From Macrostomum lignano (Eukaryota), in the NCBI GenBank assembly GCA_002269645.1, contig NIVC01001912.1, forward strand, positions 124,001 to 188,000: 64,000 nucleotides of DNA, in the 5' to 3' direction. The notes beneath the pieces were generated by a model. That model was not told where the DNA came from, did not search any database, and saw only the letters and a program-made list of their open reading frames with translations. Within the stretch, counting starts at the first letter, position 1, and the number at the start of each line of letters is the position of its first letter. The position numbers were made by a program, and so were the translations under genes. This document shows positions 693 through 19,100 of this stretch, piece by piece.

Positions 693-1988
693 GCACGAGA
701 ACGAATTGCCTGCCGAGTTTTTCCCGCAATGCTTTTTTCCCGCAGCACATTTTGAGGAGCATTTGATCGGAGTGGCGGCGGCACGCTGAAAGACATTTAT
801 ATGCCTACTAGACTACTAGGACTACTAGACTTGAAGGACGCAAGCAACACTTGCAAATCGTGCAAAAATAGTTGAAGGCCGAAGGCCGAATTAAAATGTC
901 TGCTGTATCTCCGAATCGGTTGCATGTAGAAGGTTCATTTTTTCGCCAGATTGTTGAGATTGTTGACAATTTATAACCTGTAAATTGAAGTGGCTTGCGA
1001 GTGGCAGCAGAATTTTGCAAGCAAACATAGTTGTACCGAGTTTATTTGCTTATAGCTAAACTTATAAACAGCAGTCTGTCCGCCACAAAATTCAGTAGGT
1101 ATGGTAAAACTATATTGAGCAGATTTAATCGTCTGTCGAACAGCGTTGCAAAGTGATAAAACAACAAAAACAAGAAGGAAAATGGAAAAAGTAAACAAGC
1201 AAAACAAGCAAAATGCTTCTATAAATGCCCAAAACGTCTTTTAACGCATTTTGCATTGTAAAAGTGGTAAAAGTGGTGGCTGACCTGGGCATCTCAGTTC
1301 TGGATATCCAAGAGCATCATAGGAGGATAGACAAGTGTGGATCTGCATGGGCCTCAAGTGGTAATTCAAGACCTTCGAAAATCGGCCTTTAACTATTTTT
1401 ACACGAATCGAGTGTTACGTCCATATATAACGAAGTGTTCCTAGTGGTCCTTGTTATATTGGCCCCGCAAACTTTGAATTCAGGCATATGCGTACATCAT
1501 GATGTGGCAACGAACTGCAACTTGGTCTTGCATACGGCTGCCGCGACAGCACTTAACAGCTAGCCAGATTAGTTCTGCTAATGAGAGATTCTTCTTAAAT
1601 TAACAAAGAAAAAATATATAGGTCGTTAACGTTATAATACTGGCATCGAGTTGTGAGTCATTGAAACGCAAATCAAGGTAAAAAGAAAGTTGCGTGCTCC
1701 TACTTTCAGTAGCGCTATTTGCACATTCCGTCCATTAAATCGTAAAACTGTATTTTGTAAGTTATCAGTACAAAATATATAGATTCTTTTACAGAAAAAG
1801 ATTTAGGTTTTAGGTTTTTTTTACTATAAGACGCCTTTTAGACAGGCAATTTACCGTGTTTCTGTACGAATTTTCCAGATTGAGCGCTATTTATGTGTCT
1901 AGACAGTAGATGCTACGAAAACAAGAACTTTTGCTTTGTATATGATTGAGTTTTCTTATTAAAGATGTTGCAAACCTAAAAATTCTTT

Positions 1989-2179
1989 ATCGCTTCTCGG
2001 CCTTATTGGCTAAGATCAAAGTGTAGTTTCTGTTCTTTAGAGATTAATTCCTCTAACGTAGACCATTGGTCTACTAAGTAATTAATCCGGTTTTTGATAA
2101 GTCGGGCCAGTGCTTCGTGTTCACACGACCTGGTCCACGCGTAGGCCTTGCGCTGCAGTACAGCAAGGATCTGCGCATC
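1989..2179 (+). ncRNA. U2: U2 spliceosomal snRNA, full length, variant sequence
   Basis: Starts ATCGCTTCTCGGCCTTATTGGCTAAGATCAAAGTGTAGT. Stem IIa TTAGAG/CTCTAA (2037-2056), its loop complementary to AATTAAT (2080-2086), stem IIb GTAGACC/GGTCTAC, U5 tract at 2091-2095, stem III, stem IV CCTTGC/GCAAGG with loop GCTGCAGTACA. 3' end approximate. Confidence 0.95.
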
Positions 2180-2285
2180 TAAGAAATCTTAAATATCGAA
2201 GGCGAAGCCATGGTAGTATCAAGGAGTACTGTACATGTATATAGCCATGTAGGGTGGTCCTTTGTGTGGTAGGAAGAAGGTAGAA

Positions 2286-2440
2286 TACCGACGTCAGATA
2301 CAAAACTCTGCTCATCTCAGCCCACCCTGTTAACTTTACTTTTACAGCTTTTACCTCGTGACAGCGATCAACCGCGCTGCAGCCTGGGTCGGCCTAGAGA
2401 TCAACCTGGGTGGTTTCTTTCTGGGTGGTTTCAAGTGCGC
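2286..2440 (+). other. Mosaic 5' junction of retroelement 1 (short shuffled element fragments)
   Basis: 2301-2345 copies the element 3' UTR (5433-5475); 2358-2406 copies RT region 3795-3843 (3 mismatches); 2421-2440 matches 12109-12127 of element 2. Confidence 0.8.
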
Positions 2441-5414
2441 ACCGGCGGAAGCAGCATCGGCGGCAGCAGCATCGGCGGCAGCAGCATCGGCGGCGGCTCC
2501 AGCAGCACCCGCGGCTCCAGCAGCACCCGCGGCTCCAGCAGCACCCGCGGCTCCAGCAGCACCCGCGGCTCCAGCAGCACCCGCGGCTCCAGCAGCACCC
2601 GCGGCTCTGGCTCCAGAAGCGCCAACCACAGCCGCGGCGGCAGCATGCCTTCAAGCGATCGCCAACCTACCAGAGGACGACGCAACAGCCTGGCCAGAGT
2701 TCTGCACCGCCTGCGACAGCTTCATCATCGCCGCACAGCCCGAGAACAACCGCAGAGGGAGGGGCGGACCAAGGCGCAACGACAACCTTGCCGCACGGTA
2801 CGCGAGAAACCGTCGCGAAGCCATGCGCGAGATCCTCGGCGAAGCCCGAGTCGAATGCGCGGTCCCCCTCGCTGACGTCGAAGCCGACTTCCGCCGGAGG
2901 TACGCCGACAGAGGACCCCGCGACTGGGACAGTGACGCGGCATACATCCCAACGGCGACCACCGCAGACCACAGCACAGCGGAACCGATAACGGCAGCGG
3001 ACGTACGGCGCGCCCTCAAGGGTCGGACGGACTCTGCGCCTGGCAACGACGGCCTACGGTACTCCGACCTGACCAAGGCCGACCCGTCCGGACGAGCACT
3101 GGCCGCAATCTCCGACCTCTGCCTGCGCCGATTCCACCGCGTCCCGCCCAGCTGGAAGAGCTACCGCACCATCCTGCTGTTCAAGAAGCCGGACCGGTAC
3201 ATCGCCGGCCAAGAATCCGACCTGTCCAAATGGCGGCCCATCACCCTGCTGGACACGTGCTACAAGATCCTGGCAGCCATCCTGGCGGAGCGGGTCACGC
3301 GGTGGGCGTCCGACGCCGACCTGATCAGCCCAGGACAACGTGGCGGACTCCAGTATGAAGGCTGCGCCGACCACAATTATGTTCTGAGAGCATGCCGCGA
3401 CGACGCGCGCCGCCGCAAAGCCGTCCTCGACGCCGCCTTCGTGGACCTCCGCGACGCCTTCACAAGCGTCCCGCATGACCTCCTGTTCGGCCAGCTCGAG
3501 CGAGGCGGCCTAGACGCAGTCACACAGGCCCTCATCCAAGACATTTACGCCGACAACGTCACTGCGGTGTACACCGGCCCTGATCAGGCGACTGCCGACA
3601 TCCCCGTCGAGAGCGGTGTCCGGCAAGGGTGCCCGCTGTCCGGAGTGCTGTTCGCCCTCTGCATGGAGCCGCTACTGCGTGCGCCAAACCAGGCTGACGG
3701 CTACAACCTCCTGGGGCACAGCAGGCAACTCAGCCTCGCCTACGCCGACGACGCTGCGCTCTTAGCCAACAGCGGCGAGGCCCTGCAGCGCACGGTGACA
3801 GCGATCGACCGCGCCGCAGCCTGGGCCGGCCTAGAGATCAACCCCGACAAGTGTGGCCGCCTCACCATCAACGGCGGGCCCGGGGAGGACTTCCAGCTGC
3901 GCGTACAGGCAGGCGCGATCCGGGCGCTCGCAGAGGACGAATTCTACGAGTACCTGGGCGTGCCGGCCGGCGAACGCCGCTCTGCATCCGTGGCGGCGCT
4001 GCTGGAACGCGCGCTCAACGACCTGACGGCCGTGGCGAACAGCGACCTGCTACCGTGGCAGAAGCTCGACGCCTACAACACCTTCATTGCGTCGCGCCTG
4101 CCATTCCACCTCCGCCTGCGCGACGCCGACTGGACGAAGCTCGGCAACCCAAGGCGCAAACTGCAAGGCCATCAGAGAGCGGAGCTGGGCTACGACGAGC
4201 GCGCACGCCAAATCCTCCGCCGCATCGTCTACCTTCCGACGCAGTCCTCGACAGACTACCTTTACGCCGACAGATGCCACGGCGGCCTTGGCCTGTCCCT
4301 AGCGAAGGAGGAGGCAGCCGTCCAGAAGGTCACCGAGGCCGTCAGGCGACTCTGCTGCACCGACGCCGCGCTCAGAGAGCTAGCCTGGGCCGAACTGCGC
4401 GGTTTGGTCCAACGCCGCCTACGGCTCCGGGCTGCACCTGTCCGACCCCGCGACGTCGCCGACTTCCTTAATGGCGCAGCACTCCCACCCAGCGGAGAAA
4501 CGGCCAGCTGGTGGTTCCAAGTCCGCCACGCCACCCGCGAGGTGCTCCACGCGACCGGGCTGCGCTTCACCATCAGCAACGACTGGACGGCCAGCCTAGA
4601 GTGGCGCGACCCGCTGTCCGGTACAATCCAGCGATGCGACAGAGCGGCAGCAATCACCCGGAGGCTTCACCAGGCGGTCAGGGCAGCGCACACGGCGGCC
4701 TGGCGCGGGTGCCACTCCCAGGGCCGATTCGCCACGACTGCCACGCACATCGGCAGCCACACCTGGCTGTTCAGCAGCACCGGCATGCGCGCCTGCGACT
4801 GGCGCTTCATCCACCGAGCGCGGCTGAACCTGGTGCCCACCAACGCGCTCCGGAGACTGGCCGACCCGACATCCGACCCGCGATGCCGCCGCTGCGGAGC
4901 CGGCGTCGAGACGCTCGGCCACGTCATCAACAGCTGCCCGGTGCACGCGGCCAGGTGGAGGGACCGCCACGACGGCATCGTCAACGCCGTCGCCACCGCC
5001 ATCAGCGAGGCCCGCCCAAACGCGACCATCACCACCGACCAGGAGGTCCTCCCCGGCTCTGATCTGCGACCTGACATCAGCATCATGGATCCAGACAGAG
5101 GCCGCCGTCTCCTGATCGAAGTCAAGTCGCCGTTCGAGGTCGGGCCGGCCACGTTCCCACGCAAGCACCGAGCCGTATGCCAAAAGTACGCCGGCATCAC
5201 GCAGCAGCTCAGCGCAGAGGCGCCAACGGCCCTGGCCACTTTCTGCATCGGCTCGCTGGGCGCCTGGTCGCCCTTCAACAACGCCATCCTGCGCGCTGCA
5301 GGCCTGCGCGAGCGCGACATCCGGCACCTCCAACGTCGACTGGCGCTGCACTGCATCCACTGGAGCCGCAACACGTGGGTGGAGCACTGCACCGGCGCAC
5401 CTCAAATCCACTGA
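2358..5414 (+). CDS. Non-LTR retrotransposon polyprotein (RT + CCHC knuckle + RLE), 1018-aa open frame lacking its native N-terminus
   Basis: APGNDGL, WRPITLL, DLRDAFTSVPH, GVRQGCPLS, YADD (3741), YEYLG; CRRCGAGVETLGHVINSC; RHDGIV, PD and IEVK endonuclease motifs. No stops or frameshifts. The first ~28 codons come from the mosaic junction. Confidence 0.93.
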   Translation: MTAINRAAAWVGLEINLGGFFLGGFKCAPAEAASAAAASAAAASAAAPAAPAAPAAPAAPAAPAAPAAPAAPAAPAAPAAPAALAPEAPTTAAAAACLQAIANLPEDDATAWPEFCTACDSFIIAAQPENNRRGRGGPRRNDNLAARYARNRREAMREILGEARVECAVPLADVEADFRRRYADRGPRDWDSDAAYIPTATTADHSTAEPITAADVRRALKGRTDSAPGNDGLRYSDLTKADPSGRALAAISDLCLRRFHRVPPSWKSYRTILLFKKPDRYIAGQESDLSKWRPITLLDTCYKILAAILAERVTRWASDADLISPGQRGGLQYEGCADHNYVLRACRDDARRRKAVLDAAFVDLRDAFTSVPHDLLFGQLERGGLDAVTQALIQDIYADNVTAVYTGPDQATADIPVESGVRQGCPLSGVLFALCMEPLLRAPNQADGYNLLGHSRQLSLAYADDAALLANSGEALQRTVTAIDRAAAWAGLEINPDKCGRLTINGGPGEDFQLRVQAGAIRALAEDEFYEYLGVPAGERRSASVAALLERALNDLTAVANSDLLPWQKLDAYNTFIASRLPFHLRLRDADWTKLGNPRRKLQGHQRAELGYDERARQILRRIVYLPTQSSTDYLYADRCHGGLGLSLAKEEAAVQKVTEAVRRLCCTDAALRELAWAELRGLVQRRLRLRAAPVRPRDVADFLNGAALPPSGETASWWFQVRHATREVLHATGLRFTISNDWTASLEWRDPLSGTIQRCDRAAAITRRLHQAVRAAHTAAWRGCHSQGRFATTATHIGSHTWLFSSTGMRACDWRFIHRARLNLVPTNALRRLADPTSDPRCRRCGAGVETLGHVINSCPVHAARWRDRHDGIVNAVATAISEARPNATITTDQEVLPGSDLRPDISIMDPDRGRRLLIEVKSPFEVGPATFPRKHRAVCQKYAGITQQLSAEAPTALATFCIGSLGAWSPFNNAILRAAGLRERDIRHLQRRLALHCIHWSRNTWVEHCTGAPQIH

Positions 5415-5831
5415 TTTTGCGCCGAACTCTGCCAAACTCTGCTCATCTCAGCCCACCCTGTTACCTTTACTTTTACCTGTTTTATTTATCTTCCCCTCTG
5501 CATTTTTGTTTTACTTTGTTTTTCTTTAATATTTTACTTTTTACTATTTCGTAGTACACGCACTCTGTAAGCATTTTTCGCTGTGATTCCGCCTCTCGCG
5601 CTCATCCCCGCCGCCATCCCGTCTCCTGCGCCTTCACTTTTTCCCACTGTTTTAATTGCATTTACTTCAATGTTTTACTGTTTTACGCATCCTGCGAACC
5701 CGTTTTTTAGCTACTTTCAGTAGCATCATCGGCTCTTGGCCAAATATTTCTGCTTATATCGCTTATTGTGTTTAATACTTAAATATATTGCCCGACCGTC
5801 GGATACTCGGCCGACGGGCAGGGCCTTTCGC
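2441..5831 (+). mobile_element. Utopia-type (NeSL group, RLE) non-LTR retrotransposon, family 1, 5'-truncated
   Basis: RT plus restriction-like endonuclease ORF, ~415-bp 3' UTR, and 3' end (..AGGGCCTTTCGC) joined directly to U2 nt 41 onward (TCTGTTCTT), the known Utopia target position. Confidence 0.9.
5789..5820 (+). other. Subterminal hairpin in element 1 3' UTR
   Basis: CCGTCGG (5796-5802) pairs with CCGACGG (5811-5817), 8-nt loop, 14 nt before the U2 junction. Confidence 0.55.
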
Positions 5832-5982
5832 TCTGTTCTTTAGAGATTAATTCCTCTAACGTAGACCATTGGTCTACTAAGTAATTAATCCGGTTTTTGA
5901 TGAGTCGGGCCAGTGCTTCGTGTTCACACGACCTGGTCCACGCGTAGGCCTTGCGCTGCAGTACAGCAAGGATCTGCGCATC
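5832..5982 (+). pseudogene. U2: U2 snRNA 3' portion (nt 41-end) downstream of element 1
   Basis: Near-identical to 2029-2179; lacks the 5' 40 nt; the 3' flank 5983-6088 also duplicates 2180-2285. Confidence 0.92.
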
Positions 5983-6088
5983 TTAGAAATCTAAAATATC
6001 GAAGGCGAAGCCATGGTAGTATCAAGGAGTACTGTACATGCATATAGCCATGTAGGGTGGTCCTTTGTGTGGTAGGAAGAAGGTAGAA

Positions 6089-6490
6089 GGAAGGAGGCTT
6101 CACCAGGCGGTCAGGGCAGCGCACACGGCGGCCTGGCGCGGGTGCAAAACTCTGCTCATCTCAGCCCACCCTGTTAACTTTACTTTTACCTGTTTTATTT
6201 ATCTTCCACTCTGCATTTTTGTTTTACTTTGTTTTTCTTTAATATTTTACTTTTTACTGTCTCAAAGTTAATGCACTCTGTAAGCATTTTTCGCTGTGAT
6301 TCCGCCTCTCGCGCCCATCCCCGCCGCCATCCCGTCTCCTGCGCCTTCACTTTTTCCCACTGTTTTAATTGCATTTAAAACGAGCACTGGCCGCAATCTT
6401 CGACCTCTGCGTGCGCCGATTCCACCGCGTCCCGCCCAGCTGGAAGAGCTACCGCACCATCCTGCTGTTCGCTTCGCTTCGCTTCACTCC
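6089..6490 (+). other. Second mosaic of element 1 fragments
   Basis: 6093-6145 = 4660-4712; 6146-6377 = 5433-5664 (3' UTR); 6380-6470 = 3092-3182; then TTCGC reiteration. Confidence 0.85.
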
Positions 6491-7763
6491 GGTGGTGACG
6501 TCGGCGGCACCAGCAGTCCCCGCGGCTCCAGTAGCATCAGTGGTGGCAACAGCAGCAGTACCGGCGGCAGCTGCAGCGGCGACAGCAGCAGCACCGGCGG
6601 CAGCAGCACCGGCGGCAGCGGCAGCGGCGTCAGCAGCAGCACCGGCGGAAGCAGCACCGGCGGCCGCGGCAGCGGCGACAGCAGCAGCACCGGCGGCAGC
6701 AGCAGCGGCGACAGCAACAGCACCGGCGGCAGCAGCAGCACCGGCGGCAGCAGCACCGGCGGCAGCGGCAGCGGCGACAGCAGCAGCACCGGCAGCAGCA
6801 GCACCGGCAGCAGCGGCAGCGGCGACAGCAGCAGCACCGGCGGAAGCAGCACCGGCGGCCGCGGCAGCGGCGACAGCAGCAGCACCGTCGGCAGCAGCAG
6901 CGGCGACAGCAACAGCACCGGCGGCAGCAGCAGCACCGGCGGCAGTAGCACCGGCGGCAGCGGCAGCGGCGACAGCAGCAGCACCGGCAGCAGCAGCACC
7001 GGCAGCAGCGGCAGCGGCGACAGCAGCAGCACCGGCGGCAGCGGAAGCGGCGACAGCAGCAGCACCGGCGGCAGCAGCACCGGCGGTAGCGGCGGCGTCG
7101 ACAGCAGCAGCTCCGGCAGCGGTAGCGGCGCCAGCAGCTTTGGCGGCGGCTCCAGCGGCACCCGCGGCTCCAGCAGCACCCGCGGCTTTGGCTCCAGAAG
7201 CACCAACCACAGCCGCGGCGGCAGCATGCCTCCAAGCGATCGCCAACCTACCAGAGGACGACGCAGCAGCCTGGCCAGAGTTCTGCACCGCCTGCGATAG
7301 CTTCATCATCGCCGCACAGCCCGAGAACAATCGCAGAGGGAGGGGCGGACCAAGGCGCAACGACAACCTTGCCGCACGGTACGCGAGAAACCGTCGCGAA
7401 GCCATGCGCGAGATCCTCGGCGAAGCCCGAGTCGAATGCGCGGTCCCCCTCGCTGACGTCGAAGCCGACTTCCGCCGGAGGTACGCCGACAGAGGACCCC
7501 GCGACTGGGACAGTGACGCGGCATACATCCCAACGGCGACCACCGCAGACCACAGCACAGCGGAACCGATAACGGCAGCGGACGTACGGCGCGCCCTCAA
7601 GGGTCGGACGGACTCTGCGCCTGGCAACGACGGCCTACGGTACTCCGACCTGACCAAGGCCGACCCGTCCGGACGAGCACTGGCCGCAATCTCCGACCTC
7701 TGCCTGCGCCGATTCCACCGCGTCCCGCCCAGCTGGAAGAGCTACCGCACCATCCTGCTGTTC
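6491..7763 (+). pseudogene. Internal fragment of family-1 element (long Ala/Pro linker + pre-RT region)
   Basis: GCA/GCG-rich repeats encoding (A,P,T)n, followed by a near-exact copy of ~2590-3182; breaks at CTGCTGTTC before RT motif 1. Confidence 0.88.
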
Positions 7764-7770
7764 GCTTCGC

Positions 7771-7800
7771 TTCGCTTCTCGGCCTTATTGGCTAAGATCA
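7771..7800 (+). pseudogene. U2: U2 snRNA 5' fragment (nt ~1-30) upstream of element 2
   Basis: TCGCTTCTCGGCCTTATTGGCTAAGATCA matches 1990-2018; U2 nt 31-40 are missing at the junction. Confidence 0.88.
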
Positions 7801-8602
7801 CGGCTCGTCATGTCTCGGCTTGGGTGCTCCACTTCACAGTAACATTGTCGTCTCGGCCTTTGGATTCACTGCTCGGAATATGTACACATGCAAGTGCGGC
7901 CGTCAATTTAGGTCCGAGCGCAACCTTAACGCCCATGCCGGCATCTGCAAGAACTCGGCTACCTCGCCCAGCGGCAGCAGTCCAGAGCTGCCTCGATCGA
8001 CCTCAACAGCGTCGAATCAAGGGACTGATGCAGCGGCTACCAGCAGCAGACGACAGTTTGGAGCAGCGCTGCCGAGGGAGGTTTGCCCGGCCTGCCGTAA
8101 GACACTGACAGCCAAAGGCATGTCTCGGCACTTAAACACCTGCGCAGAGAGGCAACGCGCGGCCGGTAACTACGAGGCTGCGGCCAAGGCAAAAGCAGCA
8201 ACGGACGCGCGGCATCGGTGCACGTATTGCGGCGCCAACTTTGAACGCCTTGCGCGCCACGCTGCCGTCTGCCCGGCGCGCAGTCGGGTTGGCGGAAGCC
8301 AGACTACAGCCAACGCCCCAGCCAGTCAACTGGAAGGAGCGACGCACACCTGCGACAGATGCGGCGCGCGCTTCATGTCAACCAGAGCACGCAACATCCA
8401 TGCCAGTCGGTGCCGTCCACTCGAAGGGCCCGCCCTGGTGGGCACTGTCGCGTGCCGGTTCTGCCGTGGCGTCCCTACCGTCGGCCGCTGGGCTCGGCAT
8501 GCCAGTAGCTGTACAGCACGCGCGGCACTGGCCGCGACTCTGGAAGGTGCGGCAACGGCTACGGCGACTCTGCAGTCCGGCCAGACAGCGGCAATGGCCG
8601 CG

Positions 8603-9110
8603 ACCCCGGAGGATGCGGCACCAGCTACGGCGACCCAGCAGTCCCGTCGGCCAGCGGCACAGGTCGCGACCCCGGAGGATGCGGTACCGGCTACGTCGAC
8701 TCAGCAGTCCGGCCGGCCAGCGGCCCTAGTCACGACCCCGGAGGATGCGGCACCGGCTACGGCGACCCAGCAGTCCGGCCGGCCAGCGGCCCTAGTCACG
8801 ACCCCGGAGGATGCGGCACCGGCTACGGCGACCCAGCAGTCCGGCCGGCCAGCGGCCCTAGTCACGACCCCGGAGGATGCGGCACCGGCTACGTCGACTC
8901 AGCAGTCCGGCCGGCCAGCGGCCCTAGTCACGACCTCGGAGGATGCGGCACCGGCTACGTCGACTCAGCAGTCCGGCCGGCCAGCGGCCCTAGTCACGAC
9001 CCCGGAGGATGCGGCACCGGCTACGTCGACTCAGCAGTCCGGCCGGCCAGCGGCCCTAGTCACGACCCCGGAGGATGCGGCACCGGATACGGCAACTCAG
9101 CAGTCCGGTT
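8603..9110 (+). repeat. Coding 66-bp tandem repeat (TPEDAAPATSTQQSGRPAALVT), 7 full units + 1 partial
   Basis: Read directly in DNA and in ORF 7820..10258. Confidence 0.95.
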
Positions 9111-10477
9111 CGTTCGGGCCTGCAGAACTGACGCCAGCCGAACTCTGCTGTGCTGCCCTCGACAACCTGCCTGAGGATGACGAGCAAGCATGGTCTGAGT
9201 TTTGCACGGCCTGTGACTCCCTCGTTGCCGCCGCTGTCCCGGATGAGCGCCGCGGTGGTGGAGGGTCTCATGGACGACGTGGAGCCCCCAATACCAGCCT
9301 GGCGGCTCGTTACGCTGAGAATCGAAAGCGCGCGATGCGGGAAATCCTTGGTGAGGTTCGCGTCGAATGCGCAGTGCCCATTGCAGACGTCGAGACCGAC
9401 TTTCGACGACGCTATGCAGACCGTGGCCCACGAGACTGGGACTGTCCAACCGCCCACCGGCCCGCCCCTGCTTGCCGCGACAGCTTTACGGCGGAGCCAA
9501 TAACTCCGGCAGAGGTCAAACGGGTCATCCGCGGCCGCTCCGATACGGCCCCTGGCAACGACGGGCTGCGCTACTCGGATCTGGGAAAAGTCGACCCACA
9601 CTGCTTCGCTATGGCCAGGATCTTCGACATGTGCCTACGCCGGTTTCGTCGCATCCCGACCGCCTGGAAACGGTACCGCACGGTGCTATTATTCAAAAAG
9701 CCGGACAGGTATGAGGCCGGGCAGGAATCTGACCTCTCCAAATGGCGCCCAATAACCCTGCTGGACACCATCAATAAAATCTTTGCGGCGGTTCTAATCG
9801 AGCGTGTTCTACAATGGGCGACTTCGGCGGTGCTCATCAGCCCGGGGCAGCGCGGCGGCCTCCACTATGAAGGTTTTGCCGACCACAACTACGTGCTGCG
9901 CGCTTGCCGCGACGACGCCCGACGCCGCAAGGTGACGCTGGACGCCGCCTTCCTAGACCTCCGTGACGCCTTCACCAGCGTGCCTCATGACCTGCTATTT
10001 GGTACTCTGGAGCGGGCGGAAATGGACGGGGACACCTTAGCGCTCTTTTGGGACATTTCCGCGGAGAACGTGACCGCTATCCATTCCGGTGAAGACCGCG
10101 TCACCCCCGACATCACGGTTGAGAGCGGAGTGCGCCAGGGCAGGCTCCCTCTCAGGAGTCCTCTTCGCGTTGTGCATGGAGCCCCTCCTACGCGCGCCGG
10201 ATCCTGTCGACGGCTACCTACTGCACAGACACCGGCAGCTCAGCCTTGCGTACGCTGATGACGCGGCGTTCGTCACGAGCAGCGGGGCCGCCCTTCGGCG
10301 CGTTGTCGCGGCGGTCGACAAGGCAGCAGACTGGGCAGGCCTCACCATCAACCCGGGCAAGTGCGGCCACCTTACCATCAACGGCGGCCCGGCCGAGTAA
10401 GCGGAGCTACATGTCGCTGCGGGCCCCATCCGGAGCCTTGCCGAGGACGAGACCTACGAGTACCTGGGCGTCCTGGT

Positions 10478-11566
10478 GCTAAGCGGAACCTTGTCCCGCA
10501 TAGCGATCTGTGCCTCAACTTTCTCAACGAGTGTCAGGCCAATCGCGTCTTCACCGATGGCATTGCCTCAACGCTCAACCTGAGACAGCGCTACTCCGTA
10601 GCTATCGACTCGCGCGATAACATCAATGACCATTGGAACCCTGGTGAGCTTCATTGCTACACCGACGGTTCTAAGCAGTCAGCCAACACCGGCTTTGGTG
10701 TTGGAATCTTTCTGAACGGGAGGGTCATCGCTACCCACGCTCAATACACTGGGGTCAACTCCAGTGTTTTCCAAAATGAAGTTCTGGCCATCAGCTCCTG
10801 CACTGCAGAGCTTCTCGCCACTGGCGTTACTGGTAAGAACATCATTTTCCATTCGGACAGCCAAGCTGCCTTGCACGCCATCAGTGGCTGCAGCACCAAC
10901 TCTGCTACAGTCCTTGACTGTATCAAACTCCTCAATGTGTTGGGTTCCGCCAACAAAATTACCCTTAAGTGGGTTCCGGGGCATGTGGGGATCCGAGGAA
11001 ATGAGTTGGCTGACACCCTTGCAAAAGTTGGTGCCTCCGGCTCCTCTCTCGGCCCCGAACCTCTTGTCCCGATCCCTGGCTGTGTCATCGACTCGCGCAT
11101 CAAAGCGTGGATCAGGACTCAGCACCGCTCGACTTGGGCGAACCGCACGAACTGCAGGCAATCCAGAGGCGCTGTCCCTCAGCCCTCTCCCCAGCTCCGG
11201 AAGCTCCTCTTGCGCCTCTCGCGCAGAGACATCCGGGCTGCCACCATGACCCTCTCTGGTCACGGCTGCTTCTCCAGGCACCAGTACCTGCAGGGCAACG
11301 CCACCAACGCCACCTGTAGTTTCTGCAACTCAGGTGACGAAACCGCTGAGCATTTCGTCAGCATCTGTCCCGCCTTCACGCGGGCCAGACTCACTTACCT
11401 CGGGCCACACACATCTATTACTGAAGCGTGCAAACCCGAAAACTTTAATCAGCTCATGCGCTACCTTCGGGCCACCCGCAGGGCTGAACTCTCCTTTCCA
11501 GAGAGCACCATAGCTGCTGGCGACACTGGGGGACCTCCCTGGGCGGCGCCAACCCTCCGTCCATAG
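10478..11566 (+). CDS. C-terminal part of LINE ORF2: RNase H domain + CCHC knuckle
   Basis: YTDGSK, FQNEVLAI, SDSQAAL, WVPGHVGIRGNELADTLAK (acidic catalytic residues present); CSFCNSGDETAEHFVSIC. The ORF-track start at 10361 is a read-through from host element DNA. Confidence 0.85.
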   Translation, partial: AKRNLVPHSDLCLNFLNECQANRVFTDGIASTLNLRQRYSVAIDSRDNINDHWNPGELHCYTDGSKQSANTGFGVGIFLNGRVIATHAQYTGVNSSVFQNEVLAISSCTAELLATGVTGKNIIFHSDSQAALHAISGCSTNSATVLDCIKLLNVLGSANKITLKWVPGHVGIRGNELADTLAKVGASGSSLGPEPLVPIPGCVIDSRIKAWIRTQHRSTWANRTNCRQSRGAVPQPSPQLRKLLLRLSRRDIRAATMTLSGHGCFSRHQYLQGNATNATCSFCNSGDETAEHFVSICPAFTRARLTYLGPHTSITEACKPENFNQLMRYLRATRRAELSFPESTIAAGDTGGPPWAAPTLRP

Positions 11567-11660
11567 CGACGCGTCGGCCGTTCAGGGACTAGCGGAATGG
11601 GCGCCCGCGCCTTCCCGCTGTGTCCCCTCCGGGACAGCCCTGCAGCTAAGTCAAGTCAAG
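10478..11660 (+). mobile_element. 5'-truncated RNase H-bearing LINE (I/R1 group, LOA-like) nested in element 2
   Basis: 13-bp TSD TGGGCGTCCTGGT at 10465-10477 and 11661-11673; 3' tail TAAG-TCAAG-TCAAG; clade assigned from domain order (RNase H then C-terminal CCHC). Confidence 0.88.
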
Positions 11661-13252
11661 TGGGCGTCCTGGTAGGTGAACGACGTTCTGCGTCTGTCGG
11701 CGCCTTACTCAAGCGGGCGCTCCGAGAGCTGACAGCGGTGGCGAACTGTGACCTCCTGCAATGGCAAAAGCTGAACGCTTACCGCACCTTTGTGGTCTCC
11801 CGCCTGCCTTTTCATCTCAGGCTACGCGACGCCTGCAAGGCGGACAGCGCGCGTAGCTGGGCTATGACGAGAGGGCACGCCAGATCATCCGGCGCGTCGC
11901 CTACCTGTCAGCGGAGTCGACGGTCGACTACCTTTACGCCGACAAGCGCCATGGTGGCCTAGGGCTGCCGCTGCTCAAAGAGGAAGCCGCCATCCAGAAG
12001 GTCGTTGAGGCGCTGAAGCGTCTTGGAGGCAGCGACGAGATACTGCGCGACATTGCCTCGACCGAGCTACCGTGACGTCACCGACTCACCAAGCGGTGAG
12101 ACATCCATCTGGTGGTTTCAAGTGCGCCACGCTGTCCGAGAGGTCCTGCAGCCGCTCGACCTGAAGTTCCGCATCGAACAAGACTGGACTCTGCGTCTGG
12201 AGTGGCGGCACCCGCTGTCTGGGGCGGTCGAGCAGCTCCACCGGATCAGCGCGGCTACGTGCAAGCTGCACGAGGTTGTCCGATCGGCGAACACGGCCGC
12301 ATGGCGCCAATGCCGCTCCAAGGGCTGCTTCGGGACGACGGTGATGCACATCGACCGACACACTTGGCTGTTCAATAGCACCGGGATGCGCGTATGTGAT
12401 TGGCGCTTTGTACAACGAACCCGCCTCAACCTCATTCCAACGAATGCGATGCGGCGGCTTGCTGACCCGACAGCCGAAGCCCGCTGCAGGCGATGCGGCA
12501 CAGAGTCGGAGACTCTCGGCCACGTCCTTGGCGCCTGTCGTGTGCACTCGGGCGGTGGAGGGATCACCACGTCGGCGTCGTCAGCGCGATCGCCGGCGCC
12601 ATTCAAAAGGCGTGCGCGAGCGACTGCGACGTTGCTCAGCGACCAAGATGTGCTGCTGGCTCTGGCCTACGTCCCAAAATAAGCGTGGATGACCCGGCCC
12701 GAAGACGGCACTTGCTGATCGAAGTCAAAACATGGAGACCGGCCCGGCTACCTACTCGCGACAACACCGCGCCATCTCGAGAATTACACTTGCCGCAGAC
12801 ACACCTACGGCCCTTACGTTTGCCGCGTCTGCGTCTTGTGATGTCCTTGTCTTCCCCGCTGGCCGCGGAGGCGCAGGACACGAACGAGGTTGTCTGGCTG
12901 GGCGGGCGGCGTATCTCCGGAAGGTCTGTGCTTGTGCGGACCATTGGTCGTTCCCATTCAAGGCCTGAGTCCAGGGGCCTTGGGGCTCTGACTGGTTGCT
13001 CATGTCAGTGGGAGTCCCTTCTTGGAGGGTGTGTGTCGTGCGCTTGGCTCTTTGTCACCGCACAACAGCACTATCCTGCGTGCTGCCGGGTTCGCCGAGA
13101 GCGTCATCCGCAGCCTTCAGCGTCAGCTTGCGCTCCATTGCATCCACTGGAGCCGCAATACGTGGGTGAGAGCACTGTACGGGTGCACCGCAAGCTTTCT
13201 TACGCACCCGACCTCCCTATGCCTTCGACTGGTCGCCCGCAGTCTCCAAGCT

Positions 13253-13923
13253 TGTTGTGAAACGAGGGTAGGAAGCAGTGCTGTGTGCTGACCGCGGATC
13301 AGCCCGGGGAGGGGCTCTGCCGCTGGATTACAGGGGCCTATCTACCAGGGGCATAAAGCCCGAGCGGCCCAGGTTGAGACCAGGACTCATGGCCTGGAAA
13401 AATATCTTAATTGGTGCTACTAGCCCAAGCCTATGGACTAAGACACCGCCAACCCATAGTGGAATCAGGGACGGTGCTAGGACCGAGTCCACTCAAGCCA
13501 CCCCCCCCCCCAACGACAAAACCCAAGTGTGCGCGCGAAAAATTTTCCCAAATTTTGGAAAAGCGGTCTGAGAGTGGGGAAAACCCCGAAGTCTACGGAA
13601 AAGGCTTTAGATTGGAGCGAATCTGGGCAGCTTATTTACCAAGGGCGAGTCTCCTATCAGAAGGCCGAATTGCACAAAGCTCCTCCTATGGGGCTGCGAG
13701 CCTCAAGGCTTTTTCACTAACCAGCTCTAAACAATTGGAGAATGCTTAAGCGGTCCGAGAGAGGAAATATTCTAGTCTATTGGAGCGAGTCTGGAAGATT
13801 ATTGCGATGGGCGAGTCTCCTATCAGGCAGTTGACCAAAACTACCTATAGGGCTGCGAGCCTCAAGGCTTTTTCGCTATTAAGCTCAGTATAAAGGCCAG
13901 GCCAAGGGGTTGGAGAGGGGCAC
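13253..13923 (+). repeat. Copy 1 of ~670-bp diverged direct repeat with LTR-U3-like features
   Basis: Aligns with 15017-15687; begins TGTTG; internal sub-repeats ATTGGAGCGAGTCT...GGGCTGCGAGCCTCAAGGCTTTTT; TATAAA at 13889. Confidence 0.75.
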
Positions 13924-14524
13924 AATCACTTCTAGCACTTAGCTAGGCAACCCAGTATTCAAATGAAGGTATTTATTACCTTGACTCCTGGTCAGTAAAT
14001 CTCGTCCTTGAGTAGATCTATTTCTTGAGCTTGGTTCCTCTGGATTAGACTCTTACAGTCTTTTCGATCTGGATCCGGATTGGTTAGCGTTGATTCCTGA
14101 ACAACGGTTGCTGCTGAATTTCTCGTCAGCCGGTATCTGTCGTGTAGACCGATAGGAAGCTTCGAATTAACAATGGGATCCCTGCGCCAAACTGCGGTAT
14201 CAAATAAGCCTTCTCCTTCTAGCAGTGACTTAATGCACTCTAGGTAAAGCTCCGGTAATCACTGATAGTCTTCTAAGATCTATCAGAGCAGTCCTTCTGG
14301 AGACTGCAACCAATGGAGTCTAAATAGACCCAAGAGTCTCAACAGACTCAAACTAAACTCAAATGAGACGTCTCAACAACAGGCGCAAATGAGTAAGGCT
14401 TACCGCAAGAATTCAGCCGAGTCTCGTTTGACTTGGGCTTCAGGAAGTCCTGTTAAGGCTTCCTCTTCGGAGCTCTTCTCCTTCCGGAGGATTTCTTGGC
14501 TCTGGGTCCGCTTCGGACCACTTG

Positions 14525-14820
14525 TATTTATAGGCAAATGGACCTCTCTCGAGGTCGTCCATCACCTTTTTCGTAAATGTCAACTGGTCACATTTTGGTG
14601 GCTGTCAAGCATGGCAGGACAGAAAATTGCGCAACTAGTCTACTGTAAAAGCGCATGATTGGTTATCGTAGCTGGTAGCCTTTGATTGGTTCATCCGGGT
14701 GCAAGCCAAATGATGAATCGTAGGTGGGGTTTGAACTGACAAATGTAGGTCGCACGTGACCAATGATGAATCGCAGATGGGGTTTAACTTGACAATTGTA
14801 GGTCACGCATGATTGGTCGG
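14525..14820 (-). promoter_or_regulatory. Putative minus-strand Pol II promoter (TATA + CCAAT cluster)
   Basis: TATAAATA on the minus strand at 14525-14532; ATTGG/CCAAT boxes near 14658, 14685, 14760 and 14811; minus-strand AATAAA near 13975. Motif-level only. Confidence 0.4.
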
Positions 14821-15016
14821 TTGCAAAAAATAACATGTTCGACTTTACTCTCTTGTGGTTGGCTGACTAGAATATACTTGTGATTCAGTACTTAATTTTA
14901 TACATGCTAATTATCTTACTACTGAATAAAAATGTATAAGTAGTATGTTAACCTTATTTACGGATTTTTGAGGAAGGCAGAATACTCTACAGGTAAAAAC
15001 AGTCAGATACCGTCTT

Positions 15017-15687
15017 TGTTGTTGTTAATCGAGGGTGGGAAGCCAGGGGCCCCGCGGATCAGCCCAAGTAGGGCTCTGCCGCTGGGATCTACCAGTGGGC
15101 CATACTGCCAGGGGCATATAGCCCGAGAGGCCACGATTGGGACCAGGGCCTAAAGGCCTGGACATACCTAATTGGGGCTACTAGCTCAAGCCTATGGACT
15201 AAGACACCGCCAACCCAAGGTGGAATCAGGGACGGTGCTAAGACCGAGTCCACCCAAGCCGGCCCCCAACGACAAGACCCGGGAGTGCGCGCAAAAAGAT
15301 TGGAGTTTAGAAAGCGCGGTCCGAGAGTGGGGAAACCCCAAAGTCTACGGAAGTAGTGCTTTAGATTGGAGAGTCTGGGCAGCTTATTTACTAAGGCCGA
15401 GGCTCCTATCAAGAGTAGATTATTGCAAGACCTCCTATAGGGCTGCGAACCACAAGGCTTTTTCACTACCCAGCTTTAAACAGTATTGGAGAATGTAAGC
15501 GGTCCGAGAAAGAAATATCCTAAGTCTGTGGAATAGGGCTTATCTATTGGAGCGAGTCTAGAAGCTTATTGCCAAGGGCGAGTCTCCTGTCAAGCAGGAA
15601 GACCGTCTACCTACAGGGCTGCGAGCCTCAAGGCTTTTTCGCTATCCAGCTCAATAAGGGCCAGGCCAAGGGGTCGGAGAGGGGCAC
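15017..15687 (+). repeat. Copy 2 of ~670-bp diverged direct repeat
   Basis: Same blocks as 13253-13923 (e.g. AAGCCTATGGACTAAGACACCGCCAACCCA identical); followed by AATAAA near 15932. Confidence 0.75.
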
Positions 15688-16027
15688 CAGGGGCAAGAGG
15701 AACCCGGACTCAGCCGGTATTCCCCGATTCGGGACGAACTTATTCCCTAGGACTCCAATCCAACTGTCAGTGATGAGAGCCATGACACATTAAGCAGGGA
15801 GACTACCAGAGGAGCCAGCAGATGGACCAAGGCAAGCAAGATGAACCAGGCAGGGAGGGCAGAGCTCATTACTCCAAAGATTGGATGGCTTCGAGGCCGG
15901 GGATAAAAGCACAAAGCTAAAACACAAAGGAATAAAAAATGGGAGGAGCACCTGAACCCTCAACCTGGGGCTCAGACTCAGGGCTGGCATCAGACTAATT
16001 CTATCAACTGGGTAGGGCCTTCTTCGC

Positions 16028-16145
16028 TCTGTTCTTTAGAGATTAATTCCTCTAACGTAAGCCTTTGGTCTACTAAGTAATTAATCCGGTTTTTGATGAG
16101 TCGGGCCAGTTGGTCCACGCGTAGGCCTTGCGCAGCAGCTGCGCC
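16028..16145 (+). pseudogene. U2: Degenerate U2 snRNA 3' portion downstream of element 2
   Basis: Begins TCTGTTCTTTAGAG; stem IIb mutated, ~19 nt deleted from stem III, stem IV broken. Confidence 0.88.
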
Positions 16146-19100
16146 TCAGGACCAGGACGATAACCATATGCTGGCCCAGCGTGCGTGCGCACGCAAACAA
16201 ACTGTGGTGCTGAATAGCTGAGCTCTAGTGTGCACGCACTAGCTAACTAACTTTTATTATGTACTTGCATTGTAGATGCACACTATTCTTTCCTCTCCCC
16301 TCGCTCTGACTGGCCATAGCTACCCCTAAGTTTCCATATATTCGTAGTTTATTGTAATCACGTGACTCTAATTTCGGTGTTCTCTTAGCCCGCTGCTCAT
16401 GTCACTAATAAAATAGGCTAACTTGCAATTTAAAATAAACCTTAAGTTCTTTATGACAACTACACGGCACGACACAAACAAATAAATTGAATTAGAACTC
16501 TGTAGATAAAAAATTGCGAAAGTAATTAAAGAACAGAAACAGACAATAGCATTAAAATTAACACTGCTTTTAAATATCCTCATTAAAGTAGAAGTAAGTC
16601 AAACCAGATATTTTGTCAACAACAACTTGATGATGTTAACAACTTGTTAGCTGATGTGGTGTATCTCAGTCCAGGCAGTACAGCACGTACGTGATTTGGA
16701 AGCTTTTCTTAGAAAAGTTCATAGAAAAGATCATACATTAAAGTATTTAAACCTAAACGAAACTTATTCAAGAGCCTTTGTTCTAAAATATGTACAAAGC
16801 AACCCATATTTTCATTATATTAATTGTCACAGGTTGCAAAAGCAATGTTAATTAACAATTCTACATGACTTAACCAGGTAGACTCGGACATAATTGTTCC
16901 CTATGCCCTTGGCCTTAAATTTAATTTTTAAGATACTGTTACATTTTTATCAACCAAGGGCAATGTTCAGTTTTTGTTTTGATCTTTAGATTTTAAAGAT
17001 AGCCTACCAATATTGTATTAGGCTATCAGTCATATTACTTATCACTTATTTATCAATGATTAGATCAATGATATTGCCTATCACTTAGGCCCTATCTATG
17101 GTATAATATATAATAATGAATTTATTTAATCAGCTGAAATATTTTGTATGCTATAGTATAGAATATAGGTGTCCTATACTTTGATCTTGATCATAATATA
17201 ATAGGCCAATTAAGTGTATGTTGGAATGCATATAGAGGATTTTTTGTTTGCATTCTTATTGTAAACCATGTAGCAGCTTACCAATCTTGGTCAAATCAAA
17301 TGTATATACTTCTTGCCAATTATATACCAAATTAACACCTTGACTCTTTACTAAAAGTGACAAAAGTAAAAAATAATATAATTAAAAGATTTTTAAACTG
17401 CAAAAAGTAGTTTCTTTCAAAATTTAAAATGTTAGTAATATTCAATTATTTTCTTTTTTTTAAGTTATAATTGCCTATAAATATATAGTATAGATATTGC
17501 ATAGTAGCTAAAGTTTTTTTTTGCTAGCTAATTAGTTACAGACAATTCTTATTGCTGCAGTATATAAATAGTAAACATTATATTTGAATATTGTTTTTTG
17601 GCTAAGAGCAATGGAATATACTTAAATTTAATAACTAACTTTATTCTGCAAGTATATATCTATTTCAATTAAGAGTATACATGTACATAAAAATAAAAAA
17701 CTAACATAGTATGCTGTGCAGATGCAAACTTACTCATAGACATTGCTAATAAACTAAACACAGAATAGAACTTAGTTCCCAGGAATGATCTTTACCTTAC
17801 CTATAGTTTTTATATAAACATATGGCCAAATCCAAAAATAAGGAATATAAAAATAGATCACTTCAATTAAAATATTAAGACAAATTAAGCTAGCCTTATG
17901 TAGGCCTACTCTTCAATTGGTTTTATATCTCCAAAGTAGTAGAAAGCTTAGAGTGCAGAGAGCCCATGATTTTGCTAGCAGTTCAATTAGAAAAAAGGCA
18001 GTTGTGCCATTTTTAAAGCCATTTTTTATCTGGCAGCAAAGCCATTTTTAGAAATTTGCTTTACTATTTCTGGCATAGAAAAAACCAATAGAGGCAGGCA
18101 CCATGCTAAGTGGCTTCTTAGTTCAAGGGTTTCATCTAACTAGAGTGCTCCTTGTCAGTGGCTCAACCAAGGGCAATTGCCCCCCTCAGGCAGAGATCTA
18201 AAAAACAACAATATAACTATAGTGACAAACCTTAGCTTATTGATGCAAAAGTTCTATATACTAGTTCTTATTCCAAATTTTCTAATCTGGCTCATTTTCT
18301 AACTGACATTTTTTTCTATTGTTTCAAATGCTTTAGTTTTAGAAATCATTGACACCTAGCCATATATTGAATAATTGCTACTTTTGACATACTACTAATT
18401 AGGCAAGGTTCAATAGGACATTCAAGCATGAATATCATACATTAGGAATTCAAATGGAGAATCAACTTCATTAATGAAATTTGCATTAGCAAATTTCCTA
18501 AAATCAATCAAATATAATTACTGCATCTAAAAACTAGAAGTTAATTTGTTTATACTTACTTTAATTTTTCTCAGAAACTACATTTATGATATTAGCACTT
18601 ATTTGGATTTCAATTTTACAAAGGTATTTTGCACAAGTAGCCACTATTATCATTGCTTCATAAAAACATGATCACAAGTTTTTCAAATGCTATTTTTGCA
18701 ATATAGTAGGGTATATGTTATAATAATGACATGATATAATAATAATAGACCATGTTTTAAATGTTGTTGAAATAATTAACACTATTGCAGCCACTTACAA
18801 TTTACAATAAAGAAAGCAAGGCGAGTCACTAGTGAAACCACCAGTGACCACTAGACAGGGGTAGCTATGGCAGAGAAGCCTAGTGGCTGCAAACAGAGAA
18901 CAAAGCATAGACAGGGTGGGCAGGGAGCAAACAGTGTGGCACTAGGGTGGCTGAGCAGGTAGGTTAAAAGGAGGGAGCTGTGCCCAATAGTTAAGAGCAA
19001 GGGTGGAGATGCTGCTGACCAAACAGCTAATCTAGTGGCTTACTACAATATGAAAATAAGTATGAAAGTAATGTATAAAAGTGATTGAAAGTATTATTTT

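What the first reader, a model, noticed from the sequence alone, without database searches (positions are those of the whole stretch)
1989..2179. Variant U2 snRNA: branch-pairing hexamer GUAGUU, A-less Sm site, altered loop IV, but fully compensated stems
Seen: 2023-2028 reads GTAGTT where U2 normally has the near-invariant GTAGTA. The Sm site is GGTTTTTGA (2089-2097; same in all three copies) instead of RAU5GR. Loop IV is GCTGCAG instead of ATTGCAG. Stems IIa, IIb, IIc, III and IV all pair, which implies selection on structure. Inference: either a lineage-wide deviant U2 or a specialised paralog that would pair best with AACUAAC rather than UACUAAC branch sites.
Basis: partly seen in the sequence, partly recalled or inferred. 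Interest (0 to 1): 0.72.

Follow-up and report, generated by a model that had tools for sequence, protein, structure and literature searches.

The report
Variant U2 gene beside U2-targeting retrotransposons
This is a real, well-folded U2 spliceosomal RNA gene carrying a rare change in the six bases that recognise intron branch sites, and it is the only unbroken copy in a U2 gene cluster otherwise split by Utopia retrotransposons, which insert exactly next to the changed base.

Summary
Window 1989-2183 (+) is a full-length U2 snRNA gene (Rfam RF00004, 143 bits against a cut-off of 46). It reads GTAGTT at 2023-2028, GGTTTTTGA at the Sm site and GCTGCAGTACA in loop IV, and every stem pairs.

The other two "copies" (5832-5986, 16028-16147) are 5'-truncated stumps that start at canonical U2 nt 39, the insertion site of Utopia non-LTR retrotransposons. 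Two such elements lie between the copies. Only one copy in the window therefore carries the branch-site box, and the variant T sits at position -1 of the retrotransposon junction.

- **Sm and loop IV variants:** all copies that retain those parts share them, so they predate the insertions.
- **Loop IV:** the variation is not unusual; other eukaryotic U2s show it too.
- **Sm site:** one without A is rare.
- **GUAGUU:** 0 of 91 U2 copies in an unbiased sample have it. A targeted scan found it in at least four other uncultured lineages, twice shared by diverged, structure-compensated sequences. It is therefore a viable natural state.

Whether T2028 is fixed in this organism, belongs to one paralog, or is a private mutation cannot be settled here, because the source species is absent from the searchable collections. 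Interest is moderate.

The parts
1989..2183 (+). Full-length U2 snRNA gene, the only copy in the window with an intact 5' end
   Evidence: RF00004 143.4 bits, E 2.4e-29, model positions 1-192. Fold z-score -4.2.
2023..2028 (+). Branch-site recognition box reading GTAGTT (canonical GTAGTA). T2028 corresponds to canonical U2 nt 38.
   Evidence: Read directly. 91 of 91 U2 copies in an unbiased sample have A here. Seven metagenome loci share T.
2089..2097 (+). Sm site GGTTTTTGA, with G where A normally precedes the U run
   Evidence: Read directly. Identical in copies 2 and 3. All of about 35 other distinct U2s sampled have A before the U run; a further Utopia-disrupted copy (L065) has C.
2152..2162 (+). 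Stem-loop IV loop GCTGCAGTACA (consensus aUUGCAgUAcc)
   Evidence: Identical in copy 2. The same GCUGCA start occurs in L041, and GUUGCA or CUUGCA in other lineages.
2184..2285 (+). U2 3' flank. With 2029-2183 it forms a 257-bp direct repeat with 5832-6088 (98.4% identical) that brackets element A.
   Evidence: Self-BLAST; alignment.
2286..5831 (+). Utopia-type non-LTR retrotransposon A. Its ORF (2358-5414) has an Ala-rich N-terminus, a reverse transcriptase, a CCHC zinc finger and a PD..(D/E)xK restriction-like endonuclease. Its 3' end abuts U2 nt 39.
   Evidence: Pfam RVT_1 E 1.6e-28 and no AP-endonuclease domain. CCHC, RPD, (E/D)VK and KY are invariant with U2-flanked relatives. Junction read.
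5832..5986 (+). U2 copy 2, 5'-truncated, starting at TCTGTTC (canonical nt 39). Followed by the same 102-bp flank, to 6088.
6089..7770 (+). Mosaic of A-family fragments: pieces matching A 4660-4712, 5430-5664, 3092-3182 and 2450-3182, plus an expanded GC-rich repeat
   Evidence: Self-BLAST; tandem repeats.
7771..7800 (+). U2 5' fragment (nt 1-30, ending GATCA) that forms the 5' junction of element C
   Evidence: Related elements have the same type of junction: L008 (U2 nt 1-28 | element) and L061.
7801..16027 (+). Utopia-type element C, 71-80% identical to A where alignable and lightly degenerate. Its reading frame (C2H2 fingers, RT, RNase H) is continuous apart from two stops, and a frameshift precedes the C-terminal part homologous to A.
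   Evidence: Pfam RVT_1, RNase_H (E 1.7e-11) and weak C2H2 hits. Homology blocks. ORF frames.
16028..16147 (+). U2 copy 3, 5'-truncated at the same nt 39. Decayed, with internal deletions in stem III and stem-loop IV.

Best explanation
Window 1989-2183 is a genuine U2 snRNA gene. It is the one uninterrupted unit of a U2 gene cluster colonised by U2-specific Utopia retrotransposons, probably in an arthropod-like animal.

The lineage's U2 family has a deviant Sm site (GUUUUUG) and loop IV (GCUGCAG). Both were already present when the retrotransposons split the neighbouring copies.

The intact copy also carries U instead of A at nt 38 of the branch-site box. I take this as most likely a tolerated, functional state. 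Nt 38 forms the outermost pair of the U2/branch-site helix, facing the intron base 5 nt upstream of the branch adenosine. That position is weakly constrained in animals. The change would shift preference there from U to A without abolishing branch-site recognition.

**Shown:**
- identity as U2
- the three variants
- their sharing among copies
- the Utopia anatomy
- the recurrence of U38 elsewhere

**Inferred:**
- that this copy is expressed
- that U38 is functional here
- the arthropod-like host
For: **Identity and structure**
- 143 bits to RF00004 with all stems paired.
- 29 of 44 pairs covary across 14 U2s that include this one.

**Sm and loop IV variants**
- Both are identical in copy 2, and the Sm variant also in copy 3.
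- They therefore predate at least two independent insertions.

**Utopia context**
- Both stumps start at nt 39.
- The elements encode RT + CCHC + PD..ExK and no AP endonuclease.
- Relatives at 29-39% identity sit in U2 genes with the same junctions.
- Kojima & Jurka 2015 report that intact U2 genes lie directly upstream of Utopia copies, and that disrupted genes outnumber intact ones in the same arrays (PMC4640811). A retrotransposon-ridden neighbourhood is therefore normal for working U2 genes in such genomes.

**U38 is viable**
- A targeted scan found 7 metagenome loci with full-length U2 of 95-138 bits carrying GUAGUU.
- L003 and L005 are only 74% identical, have swapped and compensated stem IIa arms, and both keep U38.
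- L004 and L007 are 95.8% identical, their changes preserve pairing, and both keep U38.
- L006 and L007 lie in U1-U2-U5 gene clusters.

**Precedent**
- Human U2 variants with one substitution in the box enter snRNPs and spliceosomes (PMC8457000).

**Host**
- The named protein hits are a spider, an amphipod and a wasp.
- The extra A in GAUCAAAGUG is shared with several canonical U2s, including ones from an insect-gut-type MAG.
Against: - T2028 is seen in one copy only, and nothing in the window shows that it is fixed or expressed.
- In an unbiased sample, 91 of 91 U2 copies (about 35 distinct sequences) have A38. Every Utopia-host relative with an intact box has GUAGUA. A lineage-level U38 therefore has a low prior.
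- Copy 1 carries at least one private derived substitution in the mature RNA (A2100, where copies 2 and 3 have G). It differs from the dead copy 2 at 4 of 257 positions, so it shows no measurably slower evolution.
- At that divergence, a neutral hit somewhere in the 40-nt 5' segment is not improbable (expectation roughly 0.3).
- No promoter element could be recognised or compared, because the window has no other snRNA gene.
- The A-less Sm site might reduce Sm-ring loading.
Confidence: 0.5

Rival explanations
1. T2028 is a private, neutral or mildly harmful mutation in a copy that is unexpressed or redundant. This would be a young pseudogene or decaying array member, with canonical GUAGUA genes elsewhere in the genome supplying U2.
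For: - Only one copy shows it.
- A38 is invariant in 91 of 91 sampled copies and in Utopia-host relatives.
- Copy 1 has a private A2100 next to the Sm site.
- It diverges from dead copy 2 at 1.6%, with no sign of slower change in the RNA body than in the flank.
- The locus lies in repeat-dense DNA with more than 25 minisatellite arrays downstream.
Against: - The gene is complete, scores 143 bits and every stem is intact.
- Its 5' flank is unique host DNA rather than element sequence.
- Intact genes adjoining Utopia copies are the norm for working U2 genes in such genomes.
- U38 is maintained in other lineages under structural selection.
Confidence: 0.35
2. U38 is a target-site escape allele. 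The A-to-T change lies at position -1 of the Utopia (and Keno) insertion site, and it lowers recognition or cleavage by the element's endonuclease. U2 copies carrying it would then survive uninterrupted in an infested array.
For: - The variant base is immediately 5' of the junction used by both elements in the window (2028|2029).
- The only intact copy is the one that carries it.
- In relatives the insertion deletes exactly nt 29/31-38, so the box lies inside the processed target.
- Disrupted copies outnumber intact ones in Utopia hosts, which gives a selective motive.
Against: - No test of cleavage was possible.
- The state of nt 38 in the disrupted copies before insertion is unknown.
- If the 257-bp repeat around element A is a target-site duplication, element A inserted into a gene that may already have carried T2028. 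That would contradict resistance.
- The metagenome contigs with U38 are too short to show whether Utopia is present.
- Adjacency of one variant base to the site has roughly a 1-in-20 chance under neutrality.
Confidence: 0.07
3. T2028 is an assembly or sequencing error, and the true base is A.
For: It is a single-base difference from an almost invariant motif, and it creates a TTT run.
Against: - It is a substitution, not a homopolymer-length error.
- The window resolves multi-kilobase tandem arrays cleanly, which suggests accurate long reads.
- The same variant exists independently in seven metagenome contigs.
Confidence: 0.05

Closest known systems
Canonical U2 spliceosomal snRNA (Rfam RF00004)
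   Same: - Full-length match with the same 5' end (AUCGCUUCUCGGCC...GCUAAGAUCA).
- Stems I, IIa, IIb, III and IV, and the IIa-loop/downstream complementarity.
- Sm site position and an 11-nt loop IV.
   Different: - GUAGUU instead of GUAGUA.
- GUUUUUG instead of AUUUUUG at the Sm site.
- GCUGCAG instead of AUUGCAG in loop IV.
- One extra A before GUGUAG and a 5-nt stem I loop. The stem I loop is shared with the 7771 fragment, and the extra A with other arthropod-like U2s.
[quoted passage not shown] 2021, PMC8457000)
   Same: Each is a U2 paralog with a single change in the box that can still assemble into snRNPs and spliceosomes.
   Different: The human variants are minor species alongside abundant canonical U2. 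Here it is unknown whether a canonical U2 exists. The Sm site and loop IV also differ, and those differences are shared by the whole local family.
Utopia, U2-gene-specific non-LTR retrotransposons of the NeSL clade (Kojima & Jurka 2015, PMC4640811)
   Same: - The 3' junction lies at U2 nt 39.
- Domains are RT + CCHC + restriction-like endonuclease, with N-terminal zinc fingers.
- Several families sit in one U2 array, and an intact U2 gene lies upstream of an element.
   Different: - Protein identity to the nearest relatives found is only 39%.
- Element C has an in-frame RNase H downstream of RT. The paper reports RNase H only in oomycete Utopia, and there it is upstream of RT.
- A 257-bp direct repeat brackets element A.
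Keno, AP-endonuclease non-LTR retrotransposons that use the same U2 site
   Same: The 3' flanking U2 sequence is identical.
   Different: Keno encodes an AP-type endonuclease. No Exo_endo_phos domain is present here, and a CCHC/PD..ExK module is.

Membership tests
U2 snRNA (RF00004) | Covariance-model score above the curated gathering score over the full model | tested here: met
   143.4 bits against 46, model positions 1-192, E 2.4e-29.
U2 snRNA (RF00004) | Conserved 5' region that pairs with U6, and stem I | tested here: met
   AUCGCUUCUCGGCC..GGCUAAGAUCA is identical to the consensus apart from a 5-nt loop.
U2 snRNA (RF00004) | Branch-site recognition box GUAGUA | tested here: not met
   It reads GUAGUU, matching 5 of 6 bases. 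A is found in 91 of 91 copies of an unbiased sample. The same variant occurs in other high-scoring U2s, so the deviation does not exclude membership.
U2 snRNA (RF00004) | Stems IIa, IIb, III and IV with covariation | tested here: met
   All are paired. 29 of 44 pairs are compensatory across 14 sequences.
U2 snRNA (RF00004) | Sm site RAU(3-6)GR | tested here: inconclusive
   GGUUUUUGA has the U run and the flanking G/A but lacks the A. All local copies share this. It is rare elsewhere. Sm binding is not testable here.
U2 snRNA (RF00004) | Loop IV binding site for U2B'' (AUUGCAGUACC) | tested here: inconclusive
   GCUGCAGUACA keeps UGCAGUAC. The first two positions also vary in other lineages (L041, L016, L043, L045).
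U2 snRNA (RF00004) | Transcription from an snRNA promoter, and presence in snRNPs | not testable with these tools
   The window holds no second snRNA gene for promoter comparison, and there are no expression data.
Utopia retrotransposons | 3' end joined to U2 at nt 39 (TCTGTTC...) | tested here: met
   Junctions at 5831|5832 and 16027|16028. Relatives L008, L011 and L065 show the same.
Utopia retrotransposons | Reverse transcriptase plus C-terminal CCHC zinc finger and PD..(D/E)xK restriction-like endonuclease, with no AP endonuclease | tested here: met
   RVT_1 E 1.6e-28 and no Exo_endo_phos hit. Invariant columns are C79, R80, R81, C82, H91, C96, P141, D142, K179 and Y180.
Utopia retrotransposons | Placement within the Utopia/NeSL lineage in an RT phylogeny | not tested
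   No tree was built. The nearest relatives (29-39% identity) are themselves U2-flanked.
Keno retrotransposons | AP-like endonuclease domain | tested here: not met
   No Exo_endo_phos domain in either element.

The most novel reading that the evidence does not exclude
U38 is an escape allele in a conflict between U2 genes and U2-specific retrotransposons. A change at the base next to the Utopia/Keno nick site protects the gene from insertion. The cost is altering only the outermost, weakly constrained pair of the U2/branch-site helix. This would explain why this particular substitution recurs in unrelated eukaryotic lineages and why the one unbroken copy here carries it.
Probability: 0.07. Interest if true: 0.8.

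Novelty: new variant of a known kind. Interest (0 to 1): 0.4.

Why it matters
The GUAGUA box is among the most conserved RNA sequences in eukaryotes. If U38 is the working U2 of this organism, and of the other lineages found here, it offers natural experiments on several questions:
- how far branch-site recognition can drift
- whether intron branch sites co-evolve at the -5 position
- whether an Sm site without its A still loads the Sm ring

The position of the change, directly beside the insertion site of two independent families of U2-targeting retrotransposons, also raises a testable idea: that selfish elements shape the sequence of a core spliceosomal RNA. If T2028 is instead a private mutation, the locus is simply a clear new example of a Utopia-colonised U2 array.

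Tried and rejected
**Searches that gave nothing**
- A protein search with the whole element A ORF found nothing at E <= 1e-10. The Ala-rich N-terminus probably swamped the word filter. Repeating it without that region worked.
- Exact look-ups of three window ORFs were not on record: the 1018-aa element ORF, and the 64-aa and 34-aa ORFs overlapping U2. The best protein relative is only 39% identical. The source species therefore appears to be absent, and its other U2 copies could not be retrieved.
- A lineage-specific U2 pattern had no match in viral contigs or metagenome contigs. A general U2 pattern also had no match in viral contigs.
- Literature searches for GUAGUU or GUGUAGUU with U2 found no report of this variant. 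The hits were microRNA sequences or unrelated.

**Analyses that were uninformative**
- Predicted branchpoint-interacting stem-loop energies differ by only 0.2-0.3 kcal/mol between A38 and U38.
- The promoter could not be assessed. The upstream 100 nt were read, but there is no same-species snRNA gene to compare with.

**Readings rejected**
- U12 or another snRNA: rejected, because Rfam clan competition returns U2 only.
- Keno instead of Utopia: rejected for lack of an AP endonuclease.
- The mir-339 and mir-7180 hits are sub-threshold matches inside tandem repeats and were dismissed.

Full report
**1. The observation**

Window 1989-2183 (+) matches the Rfam U2 model end to end at 143.4 bits. 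The gathering score is 46 and the E-value is 2.4e-29. Reading the sequence confirms three features:
- GTAGTT lies at 2023-2028, where U2 normally has GTAGTA.
- GGTTTTTGA lies at 2089-2097, where the Sm site normally has an A before the U run.
- The loop GCTGCAGTACA lies at 2152-2162, closed by CCTTGC/GCAAGG.

All stems pair.
- cmscan flags only two non-standard pairs, both in stem III.
- The single-sequence fold is far more stable than shuffles (z = -4.2; 0 of 200 shuffles fold as well).
- That fold recovers stems I, IIb, III and IV. The centroid structure shows an 8-bp complementarity between the stem IIa loop (GAUUAAUU, 2042-2049) and AAUUAAUC (2080-2087).
- In an alignment with 13 other U2 sequences, 29 of 44 consensus pairs show compensatory double changes.

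**2. What surrounds it**

The window holds one whole U2 gene, not three.
- The second Rfam hit (5806-5986, 82.7 bits) and a third fragment (16028 onward, 25.6 bits) both begin their U2 homology exactly at TCTGTTC.
- A separate 30-nt piece at 7771-7800 holds U2 nt 1-30 and stops at GATCA.

GC-rich elements lie between these pieces (60-66% GC, against 40% upstream).

Element A spans 2286-5831.
- Its 1018-codon frame has a reverse transcriptase (RVT_1, E 1.6e-28).
- The frame ends in a CCHC zinc finger and an RPD...(E)VK...KY endonuclease motif.
- Those residues are invariant in an alignment with seven relatives.
- There is no AP-endonuclease domain.

Element C spans 7801-16027. It is a second family, 71-80% identical to A where alignable.

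The segment 6089-7770 is a mosaic of A-family pieces.

This anatomy is that of Utopia, the U2-gene-specific non-LTR retrotransposons of Kojima & Jurka (2015). The paper describes four matching features (PMC4640811):
- The downstream U2 sequence starts at nt 39.
- Several families share one U2 array.
- Disrupted genes outnumber intact ones.
- Intact U2 genes, rather than 5' fragments, lie upstream of elements.

The nearest protein relatives of element A are 29-39% identical.
- They come from marine and other metagenomes, and from a spider, an amphipod and a wasp.
- Their contigs show the same junctions. L008 has U2 nt 1-28 | element ... element | U2 nt 39+. L061 is a U2 array with several such insertions and one intact gene.
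- In these relatives, as in element C here, the insertion removes nt 29/31-38, which is precisely the branch-site box.

Two consequences follow.
- Only one copy in the window can report on nt 38.
- The variant T2028 is the base immediately 5' of the junction used by both elements.

**3. How unusual each deviation is**

A scan of prokaryotic genome bins used a U2 5' pattern with N at nt 38. It returned 49 stretches of contaminating eukaryotic DNA holding 91 U2 copies, about 35 distinct sequences. All have A. Every Utopia-host relative with an intact box reads GUAGUA.

A targeted metagenome scan for the T variant found seven loci. All hold high-scoring U2s; the full-length ones score 120-138 bits and two are cut by contig ends. 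They fall into at least four lineages:
- L001 and L002 share an identical 5' part.
- L003 and L005 are only 74% identical, with swapped and compensated stem IIa arms, and both carry U38.
- L004 and L007 are 95.8% identical, their differences keep pairing, and both carry U38.
- L006 stands alone.

These groupings rest. L006 and L007 lie in U1-U2-U5 gene clusters. GUAGUU is therefore rare, but it recurs and is maintained in other lineages under structural selection.

The Sm site is also rare. Across the sample, an A precedes the U run in every sequence except the window (G) and one Utopia-disrupted copy, L065 (C).

Loop IV is the least remarkable deviation. L041 has the same GCUGCA, and GUUGCA or CUUGCA occur in several lineages.

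**4. Which deviations belong to the lineage**

Copies 1 and 2 are 98.4% identical over 257 bp, which covers U2 nt 41 to the end plus 102 bp of flank. They share the Sm site and loop IV. Copy 3 shares the Sm site. Copies 2 and 3 were split by different elements. These two variants therefore predate at least two insertions and are family-level traits of this genome's U2.

The same reasoning cannot be applied to T2028.

Copy 1 has one clearly derived private substitution in the mature RNA (A2100, where copies 2 and 3 have G). It differs from copy 2 at three further positions, at or beyond the 3' end. The numbers are too small to show either constraint or its absence.

**5. Mechanism**

From established knowledge of the U2/branch-site duplex, U2 5'-GUAGUA-3' pairs with intron 5'-UACUA(A)C-3', and nt 38 faces the first U. 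A U at nt 38 would therefore favour A at the position 5 nt upstream of the branch adenosine.

That is the outermost pair of the helix and lies outside the short animal branch-site consensus. A modest shift in preference is more likely than a new specificity.

Nt 38 also pairs with U32 in the predicted branchpoint-interacting stem-loop of free U2. The predicted energy cost of losing this pair is only 0.2-0.3 kcal/mol.

Human U2 variants with single changes in the box are known to enter snRNPs and spliceosomes at low abundance (PMC8457000).

My weighting of the explanations is as follows.

| Explanation for T2028 | Weight |
|---|---|
| Functional U2 gene, with U38 tolerated and possibly fixed | about 0.5 |
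| Private mutation in a redundant or silent copy | about 0.35 |
| Selected escape from Utopia cleavage | about 0.07 |
| Sequencing or assembly error | about 0.05 |

**6. What could not be done**

The source species is not in the searchable collections. The best protein relative is 39% identical, and three exact look-ups failed. Its other U2 genes, its U2 expression and its branch sites therefore remain unknown. The promoter could not be judged, because the window has no second snRNA gene.

**7. Verdict**

- **Observation:** confirmed.
- **Interpretation:** partly supported.
- **Classification:** a U2 gene with a rare branch-box and Sm-site variant, embedded in a new but typical Utopia-colonised U2 array. 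It is a variant of a known kind.
- **Interest:** moderate as it stands. It would rise if U38 proves to be the organism's only U2, or if the link to the retrotransposon target site is real.

Noticed in passing
window 7801-16027 (RNase H at about 10650-11035): Utopia-type element C carries an RNase H domain (PF00075, E 1.7e-11) in the same reading frame as, and downstream of, its reverse transcriptase. It lies before the part homologous to element A's C-terminal endonuclease region. The 2015 Utopia paper states that only oomycete Utopia have RNase H, that it lies upstream of RT there, and that families outside oomycetes lack it.
   Followed up: partly
window 2029-2285 and 5832-6088: A 257-bp direct repeat (98.4% identical) brackets element A. 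It consists of U2 nt 41 to the end plus 102 bp of 3' flank. It could be an unusually long target-site duplication that regenerates an intact U2 gene upstream. Alternatively, both 5' junctions (2285|2286 and 6088|6089) fall at the same point of adjacent array units. The Utopia paper left this question open for Phytophthora.
   Followed up: partly
window 2286-2410 and 6089-7770: The 5' end of element A and the region after copy 2 are mosaics of short pieces copied from the element's own 3' UTR and RT region. For example, 2301-2345 = 5434-5476, 2358-2406 = 3795-3843 and 6093-6145 = 4660-4712. At 7763-7780 an A-family sequence joins U2 nt 3 through a TTCGCTTCGCTTCGCTTC microhomology. This pattern suggests template switching at 5' junctions.
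   Followed up: no
window 21118-61437: About two thirds of the window consists of more than 25 different minisatellite arrays (periods 10-34 bp, each 0.4-4 kb), plus (TCTA)n of 2.1 kb and (TAAC)n of 0.8 kb. No convincing protein-coding gene is present. The sub-threshold mir-339 hits at 25074-25370 fall inside one such array.
   Followed up: no
L012-L060 (for example CAWUFA030000004.1, a 'Hormoscilla sp.' MAG contig of 51.7 kb): Forty-nine stretches in bacterial or archaeal genome bins carry eukaryotic U2 genes. Some are long tandem arrays, such as a roughly 1378-bp period across a 51.7-kb contig. This is host or eukaryote DNA mis-binned into prokaryotic MAGs.
   Followed up: no
L010 2095-3185; L061 14807-14998: In L010 a related Utopia-like element sits about 900 bp downstream of a 5S rRNA gene, and it interrupts U2 after nt 42 (GTAGTATCTG|) rather than at nt 38/39. 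The intact U2 of the L061 array reads GAUCAUGUGUAGUA, with U instead of A two bases before GUGUAGUA. This is another deviation in the normally invariant 5' region of a Utopia host.
   Followed up: no
window 1697-1713 and 5710-5726: The same 15-nt hairpin-forming motif, CTACTTTCAGTAGC (preceded by G at 5710), occurs about 290 bp upstream of the intact U2 and inside the 3' UTR of element A. It may be chance or a remnant of an older element upstream of the gene.
   Followed up: no
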